Virus record (IMG/VR): IMGVR_UViG_3300012988_000001
Coordinates: 186,001-250,000 of that record
DNA: 64,000 bases
Reading direction: 5' to 3' (one strand)
The notes under the pieces are model-generated. The model saw only the letters and a program-made list of their open reading frames with translations, had not been told where the DNA came from and did no database searches. Position numbers and translations under genes: made by a program. Below are positions 1,833 to 16,314 of the stretch, piece by piece; the first letter of the stretch is position 1, and each line of letters opens with the position of its first letter.

Positions 1833-1863
1833 TTGGGACAAAACCAGTTTTATGTCCTATAAT
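1833..1863 (+). promoter_or_regulatory. phage TTGGGACA-class promoter
   Basis: TTGGGACA-17nt-TATAAT; no ORF downstream. Confidence 0.8.
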
Positions 1864-1867
1864 ATAG

Positions 1868-2317
1868 TTAACCCAGTGTGGAGGCGTCAGCCTACGAATG
1901 AATCCTGATCCTATCGAAAATGTAGATGGCAGATGAGCAGACCACACGTGCGAAGTGCAGAAGAAACCCGTTAGGAGTTGGCATAGTTAATACCACCCAC
2001 GGCAATACGGCACTATAAACGAGCGTGTTAGACAGATTGACGCTTGCTAGATAGATATATGAGGGACACCTGACCACACTTGTTAAGGGAGTTCAATTTA
2101 AGGCTAGCTATAGTTGCGTCTTGAATTTGGACAACATTAAGATTCGATTGTATGGATTTTAATGTGAGCGTACTAAGACTACGACCGTTGCACATGACAG
2201 TGATAGAGAGAAACAGAGCAACCCGCTTTCGTTCTAGATTATCTAGAAATTCACTATACAATAATTCCGATGCTATCAGCGTCAAGCAATATTCAGATCC
2301 TTAATTGGGTCTTTTTT
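1868..2317 (+). ncRNA. candidate large structured non-coding RNA (or origin primer RNA)
   Basis: Own promoter and terminator, no + strand ORF of 60 aa or more, multiple nested helices and a long-range pairing. Confidence 0.6.
2295..2317 (+). terminator. intrinsic terminator
   Basis: AGATCC-ttaatt-GGGTCT then T-run. Confidence 0.65.
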
Positions 2318-2518
2318 ATTGTCTTCATTCCCCTGCGGGGGGATGAAATTGCCTCAACAAATCTCGTCAAGATATAAAGTACAATAACAATAAGTAACGA
2401 ATTGAGATAATGAATAACGAACGAAGTGAGTTATGAAGTATCGATAATTCTTAGACAATCGTAGATTGGCTAATCAAACAAGTTAGATAAGAATAAATTC
2501 CTATCAAAATTAGAATAC

Positions 2519-2541
2519 AAAAAAACCAGCTAAAAAGCTGG
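2519..2541 (-). terminator. intrinsic terminator after the frameshift extension
   Basis: Minus strand CCAGCT-tttt-AGCTGG-TTTTTTT immediately after the TAA at 2545-2543. Confidence 0.8.
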
Positions 2542-2542
2542 C

Positions 2543-2761
2543 TTATTGTTTGTTTTCTTTAGTTACCTTTTTGTTGTATGCACGAACCAGAAGATCACGT
2601 TCATTTGTAGGCATGTTAAGTAGCATCTCATAATTGGTATTAGTGATATACGCTGCTATTTCTGCAAGTGATGACTTTATCTCCTTGACATTCAGTTCCA
2701 TATCACTAATGACCTTGCTTATTTCTTCTGGCTTTGAGATGAGAAGCTGTATCCGAAAAAA
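2543..2761 (-). CDS. -1 frame extension of the gp26-like gene (gp51-like segment), 70 aa
   Basis: Open frame RIQLLISKPEEI...YEMLLNMPTNERDLLVRAYNKKVTKENKQ starts at slippery T TTT TTC and ends just before a terminator; missed by the ORF track. Confidence 0.75.
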   Translation of the reverse strand, partial: FFRIQLLISKPEEISKVISDMELNVKEIKSSLAEIAAYITNTNYEMLLNMPTNERDLLVRAYNKKVTKENKQ

Positions 2762-3594
2762 TGTGTAGGATCATATTTCAATCCAGTAATTGTCCATTCA
2801 TGCGAACACTCTGAACATTGCACATCCATTTCATGACTAATCCCAACTTCTTGGATTTTGTCAGTCTCGTCACGAACTTCTTTAAGTGTTGCTTTAGGTA
2901 GCGAACTTACCCATTCTGAAATAAATTCTTTTTCTACTACTTCTGTTCCATCAGGTGTATCAATTTTTTCAATACTATCAACAATCATATCAAAGTTTAG
3001 TTGAGTCATTGCTTCAAACACTTCTGTGAACAATTTCTTCTTCTGTTCAACAACTTCGTCCGAATCACCTTCCAACATATCAATGTATTCTGATTTCTTT
3101 TGTTCTTGGAACATACGTTGACTAAAGTCGCTATATTCATTCCATGTATAAGGTTTAAAATACACTTTTAGACCATTAGAAAGTTCTAGAGATGGTTGTT
3201 CACTAAAATAACTCATGCTATCTAGTAGTACTTGAAGATCTCGACTAAAAGCACCTTCATGACTGCAATGAGGGCAGGTTGTTTGAATTTCGTAGTCTTC
3301 TTCCTTGGATGCCACTTTAATCGCAATTAAAAGTTGCTCAACATCGTTAACATAAAGACCACCAGCATCATTAACACCCGGCACACAGTTCTCGATAACA
3401 CGAATTACGGCCTCTCCACTAATTAATGCATCAGGTGTGTTTAGCATGATCTCATCACGTGCTGCACGAGCACATACTCCAAGTTTAATTTTTTCAACAA
3501 CATCTTTATTGTACTTAATGATATTGTTAGAAGCTAGTTTTACAAAGATTTCTTCAATCTTAGTGTACTGGGCTAAAGGGTTCATCTTACTCAT
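2719..3594 (-). CDS. baseplate hub / tail assembly protein (T4 gp26-like)
   Basis: N-terminal NPLxxY, two CxxC (CPHC, CSEC), next to tape-measure-like gene. Confidence 0.7.
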   Translation of the reverse strand: MSKMNPLAQYTKIEEIFVKLASNNIIKYNKDVVEKIKLGVCARAARDEIMLNTPDALISGEAVIRVIENCVPGVNDAGGLYVNDVEQLLIAIKVASKEEDYEIQTTCPHCSHEGAFSRDLQVLLDSMSYFSEQPSLELSNGLKVYFKPYTWNEYSDFSQRMFQEQKKSEYIDMLEGDSDEVVEQKKKLFTEVFEAMTQLNFDMIVDSIEKIDTPDGTEVVEKEFISEWVSSLPKATLKEVRDETDKIQEVGISHEMDVQCSECSHEWTITGLKYDPTHFFGYSFSSQSQKK

Positions 3595-13816: not shown

Positions 13817-15400
13817 ATGAGTATTAGTTTTAATCATCCTAAAAATACGATGACTAGTACTGGAACATTGAATTTAACAGTTAGTGGTGGTAACACTACT
13901 TCACCACAGCCTATTAGATTTAATTCCACATCAGTAATTATGCCAGTACGTGCATTACCAGCGGGTGAAGCAGGTGCAATGGTATTTGATACTGGTACTA
14001 GAACCATGAAATATCATGATGGAACAAGTTGGATTGCTATTGAATCATCAGACGTTATTCTTGCACCGATTTATTCACAAATCAACACAATTAATCAAAA
14101 GCTAAATGGTAAAGTAGATACAGTTAGTTATATGTCAGGTGCAGTTCCACAAGCATCGATTAGTGGTACACAACTTAACATTACGTTTCCATTATCAAGT
14201 GGTGGCGGTGGTGGTTCCAACGGACTTTTCACCTCATCAAAACAAGGTGCGATTCAGTACTACTCACTGACTAGTGGTATGAACGCAACTACAATTCGTG
14301 CACAAATGGCTGGTGCAGGTAATAGTCAAACTGGTCGAGCAGGGACACAAGCATCACCGTGGCTCACAAATGATGGCTGGGTTTATGCAGACGGAATGTG
14401 GTGGACATGGCAGGGAGATTCTGGTACAGTAACGATGCAAGTACCAAACTTGAACCGTCAAGCGTATCTAAAACCGATGGATGTATCTGGTATTACCCAA
14501 ACTGCAACTATCATTGCCTCTTCTGGTACAGTATCTGCAACGGCACTAACCATTGATCAATTACCACCACATAGCTTTACTGTTAGTGGACAAACATCAG
14601 TAGGTGGGGAACACTCCCACATTCTACGTTACAACCCAATGGGTTGGAGTGGTACGTCTAACGTTAAAGATGGTACTGGTCGTTATAGTGGTTCTGGTAC
14701 ACATACAACTGATGTTGCTGGTAACCACATTCACACATTCACAGGTACATCCAATACTATTGGTTCTGGAAATAGTCATACACACTCACTTAATAATGTG
14801 GATGTGGCTCACTTCAATGTGGCAGTACTTTATAATATCGCAACACCTTCTTTTGCATTAAACGAAGCAGCGGCTAATGATAAGTATGTATTAAAATCTG
14901 GTGATACTATGACGGGTTCTTTGCAAATTGCAAGTTCGGCTGTTATTGCTGGTAATGATAACAACATTACATTAACTTTCCGTAACTCCGCAAATGCTGA
15001 ACGTGCTATGATATACCATAGTAGTACTAACAATACGTTGAGAATGCGTAGTGCAGGTGGTTCAGAGGTAACAATAACAAATGCTGGACTTCTAACTGCT
15101 CCTAGTTTGGTTGTTACAAATAACTCTGCAACAGTGGGTGGACGAAATGTAGTACGTTCTGTTAATGGTTCAACTGCTGATGCTAGTGGTAACGTAACAA
15201 TAACTGCTGGAATTCAAGATATACGTTTGGGTGTTCAAGTACAAGTTACTACCCGAAATACAGCTATGCTACCAGATGGATATGTTTGTGTTGGTTCTCA
15301 TTCTAACTATAATGATAGCAACTGGGAATTCGATACAATGTATGGCTGTCCTATAGAAAAACAAATTAGTGGTCAATGGTATGTGGTGAATAAAGTATGA
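13817..15400 (+). CDS. tail fibre protein
   Basis: Collar-like WVYADG/VPNL, HxH repeats (GEHSH, GNHIH, SHTH), KSGDTMTG, fibre-tip IQDIRLG...QISGQW. Confidence 0.85.
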   Translation: MSISFNHPKNTMTSTGTLNLTVSGGNTTSPQPIRFNSTSVIMPVRALPAGEAGAMVFDTGTRTMKYHDGTSWIAIESSDVILAPIYSQINTINQKLNGKVDTVSYMSGAVPQASISGTQLNITFPLSSGGGGGSNGLFTSSKQGAIQYYSLTSGMNATTIRAQMAGAGNSQTGRAGTQASPWLTNDGWVYADGMWWTWQGDSGTVTMQVPNLNRQAYLKPMDVSGITQTATIIASSGTVSATALTIDQLPPHSFTVSGQTSVGGEHSHILRYNPMGWSGTSNVKDGTGRYSGSGTHTTDVAGNHIHTFTGTSNTIGSGNSHTHSLNNVDVAHFNVAVLYNIATPSFALNEAAANDKYVLKSGDTMTGSLQIASSAVIAGNDNNITLTFRNSANAERAMIYHSSTNNTLRMRSAGGSEVTITNAGLLTAPSLVVTNNSATVGGRNVVRSVNGSTADASGNVTITAGIQDIRLGVQVQVTTRNTAMLPDGYVCVGSHSNYNDSNWEFDTMYGCPIEKQISGQWYVVNKV

Positions 15401-15928: not shown

Positions 15929-15959
15929 TTGGGACAGAAAACACTTCATGTGATATAAT
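15929..15959 (+). promoter_or_regulatory. phage TTGGGACA-class promoter
   Basis: TTGGGACA...TGTGATATAAT. Confidence 0.85.
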
Positions 15960-15961
15960 AG

Positions 15962-15998
15962 AAGCACGATGAGCAATGACGCTCTCGTGCTTTTTTTA
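15962..15998 (+). terminator. intrinsic terminator overlapping promoter start site
   Basis: AAGCACGA(T)GAGC-N6-GCTCTCGTGCTT then T-run. Confidence 0.75.
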
Positions 15999-16014
15999 TA
16001 TATGGAGAAACACA

Positions 16015-16314
16015 ATGGCTAAGAAAACTGAAAACAAAGTACAAATTCAAGACCTAAACGACGAACAACGTAAACGTCTTGGCTCTGCACTAAACAACGC
16101 AGTCGTCCAGCTAACCTATATGGAAGATACCAAAGCTGCATACGGTGATTTCATCAATTCCGTGGCTGATGAACTAGGTATTGACGCTAGTACCATCAAA
16201 CAAGCTGCAACTCGTATGCACAAAGGTGATTTCTTCGATAAAGTCCGTAAACAAGACGAAATCGAAACCATCCTTTCAATTACTGGTAACCTACCAGAAG
16301 ATAACGACGAATAA
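16015..16314 (+). CDS. dsDNA-binding protein (T4 DsbA-like)
   Basis: GGAG SD; ELGIDASTIKQAATRMHK resembles DsbA ELGVDGKMFNRLLALYHK. Confidence 0.6.
   Translation: MAKKTENKVQIQDLNDEQRKRLGSALNNAVVQLTYMEDTKAAYGDFINSVADELGIDASTIKQAATRMHKGDFFDKVRKQDEIETILSITGNLPEDNDE

What the first reader, a model, noticed from the sequence alone, without database searches (positions are those of the whole stretch)
1868..2317. About 450-nt ORF-less, highly structured transcript with dedicated promoter and terminator
Seen: promoter at 1833-1863, terminator at 2295-2317, no + strand ORF, GC above the surroundings. Outer helix: TTAAC 1868-72/GTTAA 2082-86 plus AGTGTGG 1875-81/CCACACT 2074-80. It encloses nested ACACG 1944-48/CGTGT 2024-28, AGTGC 1954-58/GCACT 2010-14 and CCGT 1968-71/ACGG 1999-2002. 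Hairpins: 1882-93, 2090-2127, 2134-65 (11 bp), 2232-48. A long-range TTGACGCT 2037-44 + GATAG 2050-54 / CTATC-AGCGTCAA 2273-85 pairing crosses the outer helix (pseudoknot or switch). It does not look like tRNA, tmRNA, RNase P or a group I core. Inference: an undescribed large phage ncRNA, or a folded primer RNA of a replication origin (T4 origins use a middle promoter plus R-loop; ColE1 RNA II is a folded primer needing a G-tract, and a G6 tract lies at 2337-42).
Basis: partly seen in the sequence, partly recalled or inferred. Interest (0 to 1): 0.85.

Follow-up and report, generated by a model that had tools for sequence, protein, structure and literature searches.

The report
New ornate RNA family in phages
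The ORF-less stretch is a real gene for a large, intricately folded RNA from a family I could not find described anywhere; jumbo phages keep about four copies of it, and it also sits in a prophage and an E. coli island, but its function is unknown.

Summary
Window 1834-~2480 (+) is a cassette: a phage promoter, a ~500-nt pseudoknotted RNA, and a variable 3' tail.

- **Known families:** no Rfam 15 family, tRNA or tmRNA matches.
- **Conservation:** homologues at 66-85% identity lie in the same ORF-less gap of 62 jumbo-phage records.
- **Covariation:** it is overwhelming. In the core, 99.4% of cells are paired, 19 of 28 pairs carry compensatory changes, and 0 of 500 shuffles reach this.
- **Strand:** invariant G.U pairs fix the + strand.
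the outer helix and both long-range pairings fail. The 5' strand instead pairs with a hairpin loop (1942-48). Three more pseudoknots or tertiary pairs covary.
- **Terminator:** the hairpin at 2295-2317 is real. It is missing from other paralogues, and conservation continues past it.
- **Copy number:** each genome examined carries 3-4 recovered paralogues, four in the window's own contig. Only one lies in this window.
- **Other hosts:** copies with the same promoter sit beside an integrase in a Citrobacter prophage and in an E. coli island at ffs.

Best reading: an autonomous, trans-acting folded RNA of a new class. The replication-primer idea is not supported. Function is unknown.

The parts
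1834..1863 (+). Promoter: TGGGAC, an 18-nt spacer (TGTCC just before the -10), and TATAAT. The start site is predicted near 1870.
   Evidence: 12 such sites in the window, all on the + strand. It is conserved upstream of every copy, including the bacterial ones. It matches the 'divergent RpoD-like' class of phage CBB (PMC5259590).
1872..2089 (+). 5' domain, closed by a short P1 helix (CCC 1872-74 with GGG 2087-89).
   Evidence: these pairs are C-G or U-G only, with one-sided changes and 2-3 G.G mismatches per pair among 25 sequences. Overall, 18 of 30 predicted pairs in the domain carry compensatory changes.
1875..1948 (+). Pseudoknot PK1: the 5' strand 1875-81 pairs with the loop 1942-48 of hairpin P4 (stem 1937-39/1949-51).
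   Evidence: 10 sequence variants, cognate mean 7.3 bp against 4.1 bp for non-cognate pairings. P4's middle pair is C-G, U-A or A-U.
1882..1893 (+). P2, a variable hairpin, often with a GNRA-type loop in relatives.
   Evidence: 4 of 4 pairs compensatory. Alignments.
1910..1934 (+). P3 hairpin with a near-invariant 9-nt loop, GAAAAUGUA.
   Evidence: 5 of 5 predicted pairs have double changes. One search agrees.
1954..2014 (+). P5 (1954-58/2010-14) encloses P6 (1968-71/1999-2002) and a variable arm, P6a (1972-1998).
   Evidence: In paralogue B of the same genome P6 is capped directly by a UUCG loop.
2005..2058 (+). Tertiary Watson-Crick contact PKc: 2005-07 with 2056-58.
   Evidence: the pair 2007-2056 is A-U in 11 sequences and G-C in 31, 42/42 canonical. 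It switches between close relatives.
2020..2046 (+). P7 hairpin.
   Evidence: 187/192 cells paired, 6 of 6 pairs compensatory.
2061..2072 (+). P8, a small hairpin.
   Evidence: 2 of 4 pairs compensatory.
2091..2132 (+). P9, a long stem. It carries the module UAUAG(A/U)U(C/G)CGUC...AAUU.
   Evidence: Among paralogues the module moves to stem P14.
2134..2165 (+). P10, a 12-bp hairpin. Its loop (2147-53) forms pseudoknot PKa with 2256-62.
   Evidence: 9 of 11 pairs compensatory. PKa: 216/217 cells paired, 4 of 7 positions compensatory, at least 10 variants.
2168..2184 (+). P11 hairpin.
   Evidence: 4 pairs, 100% paired, 3 compensatory.
2187..2222 (+). Pseudoknot PKb: GUUGC 2187-91 with GCAAC 2218-22, which lies in the invariant loop of P13.
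   Evidence: Variants are GUUAC/GUAAC and GUUGU/ACAAC. The pair 2191-2218 is C-G in 31 sequences and U-A in 12.
2199..2255 (+). P12 (2199-2203/2251-55) encloses P13 (2206-10/2226-30, with a 15-nt invariant loop) and P14 (2232-48).
   Evidence: all 100% paired (P14's modelled pairs 99%). P12 has 3 of 5 pairs compensatory. One P13 position takes 5 pair types.
2269..2283 (+). P15 hairpin with loop UAUCA (probable).
   Evidence: Alignment shows GAUGC/GCGUC against GACGA/UCGUC. The statistical test is inconclusive.
2295..2317 (+). Intrinsic-terminator-like hairpin plus a U-run. It is an insertion specific to paralogue types A and B and the bacterial copies.
   Evidence: It is absent from paralogues C and D, 121Q_x and XaC1.
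2322..2345 (+). It is present in all paralogues.
   Evidence: A U.G pair in 24 of 26 sequences fixes the + strand.
2358..2371 (+). Conserved unpaired block, CAAAUCUCGUCAAG. This is the last element shared by all paralogues.
2451..2473 (+). P20 hairpin of the 3' tail (types A and B).
   Evidence: 6 of its 8 pairs have compensatory changes.
2523..2544 (.). Bidirectional terminator. It separates the cassette from the convergent small ORF and baseplate-hub gene, and is the likely end of the long isoform.
   Evidence: Conserved in relatives.

Best explanation
Window 1834-~2480 (+) is one gene copy ('paralogue A') of a previously undescribed family of ornate structured RNAs.

**What is shown**
- Host RNA polymerase would start at about 1870, from a promoter with an extended -10 element.
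- The transcript folds into two domains (1872-2089 and 2091-2283). At least four pseudoknots or tertiary Watson-Crick contacts hold them together, and there are long invariant unpaired stretches.
- Structure continues through a conserved GC hairpin and an unpaired block to about 2371.

**What is inferred**
- In this paralogue a weak intrinsic terminator (2295-2317) probably produces a ~445-nt short form. Read-through would give a 610-680-nt long form.
- The RNA itself is the product. It acts in trans as a folded RNA: a scaffold or decoy for a conserved host machine, a self-assembling particle, or a ribozyme.
- The four diverged paralogues probably provide different specificities.
- The cassette is self-contained, which would explain how it moved into a prophage and a chromosomal island.
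For: **Real structured RNA on the + strand**
-. In one search, 99.4% of cells are paired, 19 of 28 pairs are compensatory, the covariation score is 0.566 against 0.179 for shuffles (0 of 500 reach it), and slid controls give 0.08 or less.
- Helix cells show many G.U and almost no A.C.
- Pseudoknots.

**Not coding:**

**Not a known family:**

**Stand-alone gene**
- In every genus examined, copy A is a lone + strand unit between minus-strand genes, EndoVII and the baseplate hub.
- It has its own promoter and terminators.

**Family size and age**
- Four loci from the window's own contig.
- GAP32 copies lie at about 35, 178, 262 and 341 kb.
- Paralogue lineages are shared across genera.

**Portability**
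- The E. coli island copy scores 132 bits.
- The Citrobacter prophage copy sits beside a serine integrase and a CI-like repressor.
- Both keep the promoter.
- Both group with or beside the Eneladusvirus A copies in the tree.
- No protein neighbour is shared between these contexts.
Against: - There is no expression data for any member. The ends, isoforms and stability are all inferred.
- The terminator lies upstream of sequence that is conserved in all paralogues. This is awkward for a simple 'gene ends at the terminator' model.
- Paralogues B, C and D and the bacterial copies are each followed by co-oriented genes, so a cis (leader) role is not excluded for them.
- The trans-acting mechanism has no direct support: no target, partner or catalytic motif was identified.
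- MFE folding is not better than shuffles.
Confidence: 0.6

Rival explanations
1. It is a cis-acting leader. The folded RNA would stay with, or signal to, the transcribing RNA polymerase. That would control read-through of the internal terminator and of downstream terminators, by processive antitermination or attenuation. HK022 put RNA and riboswitch-type leaders work this way.
For: - The promoter is part of the conserved cassette, and the RNA lies at the 5' end of a transcription unit.
- Paralogues B, C and D, the prophage copy and the island copy are all followed by co-oriented genes.
- An intrinsic terminator lies inside types A and B, yet conserved RNA follows it.
- The phage also uses a promoter-proximal terminator elsewhere, at 15930-15999.
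Against: - In every genus, copy A has no co-oriented downstream gene. It runs into convergent late genes and is closed by a second, bidirectional terminator.
- Paralogues C and D have no internal terminator to regulate.
- The downstream genes differ between contexts.
- About 500 nt with four pseudoknots is far larger than any known antitermination RNA (my own knowledge).
Confidence: 0.2
2. It is a replication-origin primer transcript. The structured RNA would form a persistent R-loop near the C4/G6 hairpin and the AT-rich tail, and prime leading-strand synthesis. Several origins would be spread around the 366-kb genome, as with T4 oriF/oriG or ColE1 RNA II.
For: - The promoter class is the one linked to DNA-synthesis genes in CBB (PMC5259590).
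- There are four co-oriented copies spaced around the genome.
- Conservation continues beyond the terminator into a G-rich hairpin and an AT-rich tail.
Against: - Copies with the same promoter sit next to integrases in a temperate prophage and in a roughly 10-kb island. I saw no T4-type replisome genes in the stretches examined there.
- The 'G tract' and the tail form RNA hairpins with compensatory and U.G pairs.
- The family was not found at the RaK2, Vibrio-phage or PA5oct syntenic sites.
- T4 origins need no elaborate RNA fold (established knowledge).
- No antisense regulator was detected.
Confidence: 0.08
3. It is a DNA-level element (protein-binding sites, a packaging or recombination signal) or a degraded or unusual protein-coding gene.
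For: Records of relatives annotate tiny ORFs here. The block CGTCAR occurs twice.
Against: - The compensatory changes preserve base pairing rather than sequence.
- G.U pairs would be A.C on the other strand.
- No frame is conserved, and indels are not multiples of three.
Confidence: 0.02

Closest known systems
GOLLD and ROOL RNAs (large ornate RNAs carried by prophages and phages)
   Same: They are at least 500 nt, densely structured with pseudoknots, and encoded by phages or prophages as stand-alone genes. They have no dedicated protein partner and their function is unknown. Cryo-EM shows both form RNA-only multimers (bioRxiv 10.1101/2024.12.08.627333).
   Different: Neither Rfam model matches here. 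This family is in phages and elements of Gammaproteobacteria. It has about four diverged paralogues per genome and is not adjacent to tRNA genes. Oligomerisation is untested.
OLE and raiA RNAs (large bacterial ncRNAs of unresolved function)
   Same: They have comparable size and complexity, with long invariant unpaired stretches between covarying helices.
   Different: They are chromosomal, single-copy and found in Gram-positive bacteria, and OLE works with dedicated proteins. No model matches.
PA5oct ncRNA001-004 (jumbo phage of the same broad clade; found by RNA-seq, PMC7318152)
   Same: There are four ORF-less + strand transcripts of 236-619 nt in a related jumbo phage. Two are very abundant, and their function is unknown.
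   Different: They are not homologous. The core model finds nothing in ncRNA001, 002 or 004, and the invariant motifs are absent from ncRNA002, the one I read. ncRNA003 was not fetched. No structure or covariation was reported for them.
ColE1 RNA II and T4 oriF/oriG origin transcripts
   Same: A promoter-driven, ORF-less transcript of several hundred nucleotides. The promoter is of a class linked to replication genes. A G-rich stretch lies downstream.
   Different: The fold is far more elaborate and conserved. The G stretch is paired in an RNA hairpin. The cassette also lives in elements that do not appear to carry a T4-type replisome. No antisense RNA I-like partner was found.
Bacterial RNase P RNA
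   Same: There is a local resemblance. The invariant ACAGAGCAACCCGCUU recalls the ACAGA...CCCGGCUUA of the P4 region, and it also takes part in a long-range pseudoknot (my recollection of M1 RNA, used only as a lead).
   Different: No RNase P model scores, even at E = 10. The 5' partner strand and the conserved GGAAAGUCC block are absent.
HK022 put RNA (cis-acting antitermination RNA)
   Same: It is a promoter-proximal phage RNA that needs only host RNA polymerase and is followed by terminators.
   Different: put is about 70 nt with two stem-loops. Copy A of this family has nothing downstream to antiterminate.

Membership tests
Any Rfam 15 family (including RNase P, tmRNA, group I/II introns, GOLLD, ROOL, OLE, HEARO, 6S, riboswitches) | Covariance-model score at or above the family's gathering threshold | tested here: not met
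   whole window, 0 hits; 1790-2560 at E up to 10, only terminator-like noise outside or at the edge; 8 homologous loci, nothing on the element.
tRNA / tmRNA | Cloverleaf or tRNA-like domain with a tag reading frame | tested here: not met
   ARAGORN finds 0 genes in the window.
Conserved structured ncRNA (generic) | Base pairs maintained by compensatory substitutions beyond shuffled and shifted controls | tested here: met
   99.4% paired, 19 of 28 pairs compensatory, 0 of 500 shuffles reach it, slid controls 0.08 or less. Searches agree.
Conserved structured ncRNA (generic) | Defined strand and its own transcription signals | tested here: met
   Invariant G.U pairs. The promoter class occurs only on the + strand. 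Terminators. Transcription itself was not observed.
Intrinsic terminator | GC-containing hairpin directly followed by a U-run | tested here: met
   2295-2312, 6 bp with 3 GC pairs, followed by T6. The stem covaries. Its efficiency cannot be tested here.
Origin primer RNA (ColE1 RNA II / T4 ori type) | Tied to the replicon's own replication system | tested here: not met
   Copies lie beside integrases in a prophage and in an E. coli island. None was found at the RaK2 syntenic site.
Origin primer RNA (ColE1 RNA II / T4 ori type) | Persistent RNA-DNA hybrid, RNase H processing, and a DNA start site downstream | not testable with these tools
   This needs R-loop or nascent-strand mapping.
Origin primer RNA (ColE1 type) | Antisense regulator RNA overlapping the 5' region | tested here: not met
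   Minus-strand promoter-like sites are weak (9 of 12) and lie in conserved RNA elements. The Rfam RNAI 'hit' is only the far terminator at 2517-2560.
Cis-regulatory leader / antitermination RNA | Always upstream of co-oriented regulated genes | tested here: not met
   Copy A faces convergent genes in every genus. The feature is met for paralogues B, C and D and the bacterial copies.
Protein-coding gene | Reading frame conserved among homologues, with variation concentrated at third positions | tested here: not met
   frames intact in only 2-7 of 31-32 homologues. Variability by position is 0.22/0.17/0.17.

The most novel reading that the evidence does not exclude
The family is a protein-independent RNA machine. 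It would be either a ribozyme or a self-assembling, possibly hetero-oligomeric particle built from the four paralogues. It would capture or modify a universal host component such as RNA polymerase, the ribosome or RNA-decay enzymes. Mobile elements would trade it as a stand-alone weapon, which would explain its jump from jumbo phages into a prophage and a defence-type island.
Probability: 0.25. Interest if true: 0.95.

Novelty: categorically new. Interest (0 to 1): 0.82.

Why it matters
Very few RNA classes of this size and complexity are known in bacteria and phages. The examples are rRNAs, RNase P, group I/II introns, tmRNA, OLE, GOLLD, ROOL and raiA. Each has either revealed new biochemistry or remains a prominent open problem.

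This family has several practical advantages:
- It occurs in cultivable E. coli, Salmonella, Cronobacter, Erwinia and Serratia phages, so genetics, RNA-seq, probing and cryo-EM are immediately feasible.
- The paralogues and their many pseudoknot variants form a ready-made mutational series.
- Transfer into a prophage and an island suggests a function that matters in conflicts between mobile elements and hosts.

It also corrects annotation. Several GenBank records call spurious small proteins across it.

Tried and rejected
- **Known RNA families.** Rfam gathering and E-value scans of the window and of 8 homologous loci gave nothing. ARAGORN gave nothing.
- **RNase P.** An RNase P-like motif (ACAGA..CCCGCUU) was followed up. 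No model support and no matching 5' strand, so it was rejected.
- **tmRNA-like tag frame.** A frame starting at GCA 2191 was considered. It was rejected because indels of 1-2 nt break the frame in relatives.
- **Hammerhead-like motifs.** The GAUGAG/CGAAA motifs are in the wrong order, and Rfam gives no hit.
- **Single-sequence folding.** Not significant.
Rejected by covariation.
- **Proposed helix CUCAA 2353-57 / UUGAG 2402-06.** Not supported.
- **The UAAGG/CCGUUG pairing proposed by RNAalifold.** It is invariant and overlaps the better-supported PKb, so it is left open.
- **PA5oct ncRNAs as distant homologues.** No.
- **Syntenic sites in RaK2, Vibrio phage 2.275.O and PA5oct.** No member. 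The RaK2 gap is only 365 nt.
- **Plasmids.** No match.
- **Bacterial genome scan with a 19-nt motif.** Of the 34 bacterial-genome stretches, only the Citrobacter one matched the family by blastn.
- **Neighbouring proteins as a functional clue.** Nothing is shared between contexts.
- **Literature searches.** No description of this RNA. One search was badly framed and useless.

Full report
**Setting.** The window comes from a jumbo phage related to RaK2.
- An 800-nt stretch (1748-2547) spanning the cassette is 100% identical to part of a 366,160-bp metagenome contig, Ga0164306_10000001, also listed as IMGVR_UViG_3300012988_000001.
- The closest cultured relative is Salmonella phage 7t3, at 85% identity.
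- The finding lies in a 750-nt ORF-less gap. On one side are a gp46-like Rad50 gene (35-1279, +) and endonuclease VII (1295-1789, -). On the other are a 52-aa ORF (2543-2701, -) and a T4-type baseplate hub gene (2719-3594, -).

**The observation.**
- The promoter is real as a motif. The sequence at 1834-1863 is one of 12 sites in the window with TGGGAC, a spacer and an extended -10 (TGTGnTATAAT), all on the + strand.
- The CBB paper describes the same class as a 'divergent RpoD-like' promoter (TGAAACG at -35) found mostly before DNA-synthesis genes (PMC5259590).
- The hairpin plus U-run at 2295-2317 is found by the terminator scan.
- No reading frame is conserved in homologues, and substitutions show no clear codon periodicity.
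- GC is modestly raised.
- Folding energy is not better than shuffles (z = -1.26).

**Conservation.**
- blastn finds the region in 62 jumbo-phage records at 66-85% identity. These include Asteriusvirus (121Q, PBECO4), Mimasvirus (GAP32, CBB, XbC2), Eneladusvirus (BF and pEa_SNUABM phages), the 7t3/Munch group, and EJP2 and Hallingskeid.
- It lies in the same gap in nearly all of them. For BF and its closest relatives the best match is another paralogue. The region is either unannotated or covered by tiny minus-strand 'hypothetical proteins'.
- Conservation starts at the promoter and runs to about 2480, well past the terminator.
- Long blocks are invariant, with no wobble pattern.

**Structure.**
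- RNAalifold predicts 30 pairs on alignment A6 (5' domain), 43 on A2 (3' domain) and 17 on A5 (tail). Of these, 18, 26 and 6 carry compensatory double changes.
- I built a covariance model of the core, 2133-2266, and used it to realign 34 copies. On that alignment:
  - 99.4% of 893 cells form standard pairs.
  - 19 of 28 pairs have double changes.
  - The covariation score is 0.566, against 0.179 +/- 0.012 in shuffles. None of 500 shuffles reaches it.
  - Shifting partners by 1-3 columns drops pairing to 30-52% and the score to 0.08 or less.
- Several pairs are invariant G.U. Helix cells contain many G.U and almost no A.C. The + strand is therefore the folded strand.

- Confirmed: AGTGC/GCACT, CCGT/ACGG and the four local hairpins.
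- Failed: the outer helix (56-70% canonical), ACACG/CGTGT (44%) and TTGACGCT/AGCGTCAA (57%, no compensation).
- The 5' strand 1875-81 in fact pairs with 1942-48, the loop of a small hairpin. Ten sequence variants keep 5-9 bp. Non-cognate combinations average 4.1 bp against 7.3 bp for cognate ones.
- The 5' domain is closed only by CCC 1872-74 with GGG 2087-89.

**Further long-range contacts that covary.**
- PKa: the P10 loop 2147-53 with 2256-62. 216 of 217 cells are paired, with at least 10 variants.
- PKb: GUUGC 2187-91 with GCAAC 2218-22, inside the invariant loop of P13.
- PKc: 2005-07 with 2056-58. Its central pair is A-U in 11 sequences and G-C in 31, with no exception.
- GATAG/CTATC cannot be tested.

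**A peripheral module moves.** The module UAUAG(A/U)UCCGUC..AAAAUU sits on stem P9 in some copies, on P14 in others, and on both in a few. Tertiary-contact or protein-binding modules behave this way in other large RNAs. That comparison rests on my own knowledge.

**The 3' end.**
- All paralogues share a 10-bp C/G hairpin (2322-45; U.G in 24 of 26 sequences) and the block CAAAUCUCGUCAAG (2358-71).
- Types A and B also share a tail ending in hairpin 2451-73, which covaries.
- The terminator hairpin between P15 and this region is present in types A and B and the bacterial copies. It is absent in types C and D, 121Q_x and XaC1.
- It is therefore a lineage-specific insertion inside the conserved RNA.
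- I infer partial termination, giving a short and a long isoform. The long one probably ends at the bidirectional terminator 2523-44. This is unverified (notebook, 'unexplained').

**A multi-copy family.**
- A relaxed motif scan plus the model found 23 more copies.
- The window's own contig has four loci (L023, which is the window, plus L019, L142 and L148). BF also has four, and CBB, 121Q and Yen9-04 at least three.
- GAP32 has five matching stretches, two of them identical, so four distinct copies.
- The model finds only one copy in the 64-kb window.
- In GAP32 the copies lie at about 35, 178, 262 and 341 kb. All are on the + strand, and each sits in a 650-800-nt gap.
- A tree shows paralogue lineages shared across genera, so the duplications are old and have been retained.
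- Copy A is always a lone + strand unit between minus-strand genes. The others are followed by co-oriented genes of unknown function. Copy B is followed by a small ORF and an ADP-ribosylglycohydrolase.
- XaC1 has a divergent member at the A site (63 bits). RaK2, a Vibrio jumbo phage and PA5oct have none at that site, and the RaK2 gap is only 365 nt.

**Outside jumbo phages.** Two of 5,426 complete E. coli genomes carry a copy.
- In strain LR-29-1 it scores 132 bits with the core model. It lies in a roughly 10-kb island inserted next to ffs.
- The island has an IS-disrupted tyrosine integrase, unknown ORFs, a resolvase and the candidate defence system PDC-M45 (DuOB, DUF488, mSLOG/DUF4326).
- In Citrobacter amalonaticus P55 and in a related metagenome contig, the RNA lies directly after a large serine recombinase at the edge of the inserted element. 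In Citrobacter it is followed by a 165-aa ORF and a CI-type repressor, and host pilus/T2SS genes lie on the other side.
- Both bacterial copies keep the same promoter motif, the terminator and the GC hairpin. In the tree they group with or beside the Eneladusvirus A copies.
- So a self-contained cassette has moved between very different mobile elements.
- No match was found in plasmids.

**What it is not.**
- No Rfam 15 family, tRNA or tmRNA matches.
- The four ncRNAs that RNA-seq found in PA5oct (PMC7318152) are a useful precedent for abundant ORF-less transcripts in this clade. They are not homologous.
- Literature searches found no description. This covers only the library I could search.

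**Mechanism.** The following are shown:
- a conserved, pseudoknotted + strand fold;
- its own promoter motif;
- no coding capacity;
- multiple old paralogues;
- portability;
- no constant protein neighbour.

From these I infer that the RNA is itself the product and works in trans. It may bind a conserved host machine, self-assemble as ROOL and GOLLD do, or act catalytically.
- My confidence that it is a genuine new structured-RNA family is about 0.95. My confidence in the trans-acting reading is about 0.6.
- A cis-acting leader or antitermination role (about 0.2) fits paralogues B, C and D and the internal terminator. It does not fit copy A.
The prophage and island copies, the RNA-level constraints on the 'G tract', and its absence at the RaK2 site all count against it.

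**Verdict.** This is a real and unusually rich finding.

Noticed in passing
window 15930-16017: A promoter of the same class (15930-59) is followed at once by a hairpin (AGCACGA/TCGTGCT) plus T7. An RBS and ATG follow near 16006-16017. This is either a promoter-proximal terminator or attenuator, or a roughly 40-nt RNA.
   Followed up: no
window 1834, 15930, 20003, 24086, 28741, 28850, 34035, 38931, 45379, 51078, 53586, 63253 (all +): There are twelve copies of the promoter motif TGGGAC-N-TGTGnTATAAT and none on the minus strand. It matches the 'divergent RpoD-like' promoter reported for CBB and GAP32.
   Followed up: partly
L001:3968-4906; L006:2459-3278; L010:2464-3107: GenBank records of 7t3, Hallingskeid and Kaldavass annotate strings of tiny minus-strand 'hypothetical proteins' across the RNA. 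None is conserved, so they are probably spurious calls.
   Followed up: yes
L128:7755-18305 (E. coli LR-29-1, NZ_AP027515.1): An island of about 10 kb is inserted beside ffs. It holds an IS3-disrupted integrase, the RNA cassette, about 700 nt of further non-coding DNA with ATCGATCG-type repeats, the candidate defence system PDC-M45 (DuOB, DUF488, mSLOG/DUF4326) and a resolvase.
   Followed up: partly
L052:1845-6991 (Citrobacter amalonaticus P55): This is the end of a prophage: a large serine recombinase, the RNA cassette, a 165-aa ORF, a CI-like repressor (HTH plus S24 peptidase), with host pilin/T2SS genes on the other side. One or more metagenome contigs show the same layout (checked in L103).
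   Followed up: partly
L019:6171-7535: Paralogue B is followed by a conserved small ORF (starting MITAICEM in several genera) and an ADP-ribosylglycohydrolase (Pfam E = 1.9e-68). The link recurs in BF and XbC2.
   Followed up: partly
window 2091-2132 and 2232-2248; L019:5799-5963: The sequence module UAUAG(A/U)UCCGUC..AAAAUU is carried on different stems in different paralogues, and on both in the prophage group.
   Followed up: partly
L158:464-699, 14152-14602; L159:617-1235 (PA5oct): The RNA-seq-defined ncRNAs of PA5oct (two very abundant) are unrelated to this family. They remain unexplained large phage RNAs.
   Followed up: partly
L019:10149-10227: A tRNA gene lies about 4 kb downstream of paralogue B in the window's genome. 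None lies inside the 64-kb window.
   Followed up: no
window 2523-2544: A bidirectional terminator (CCAGC..GCTGG with A and T runs on both sides) is shared by the RNA cassette and the convergent late genes. It is conserved in relatives.
   Followed up: partly
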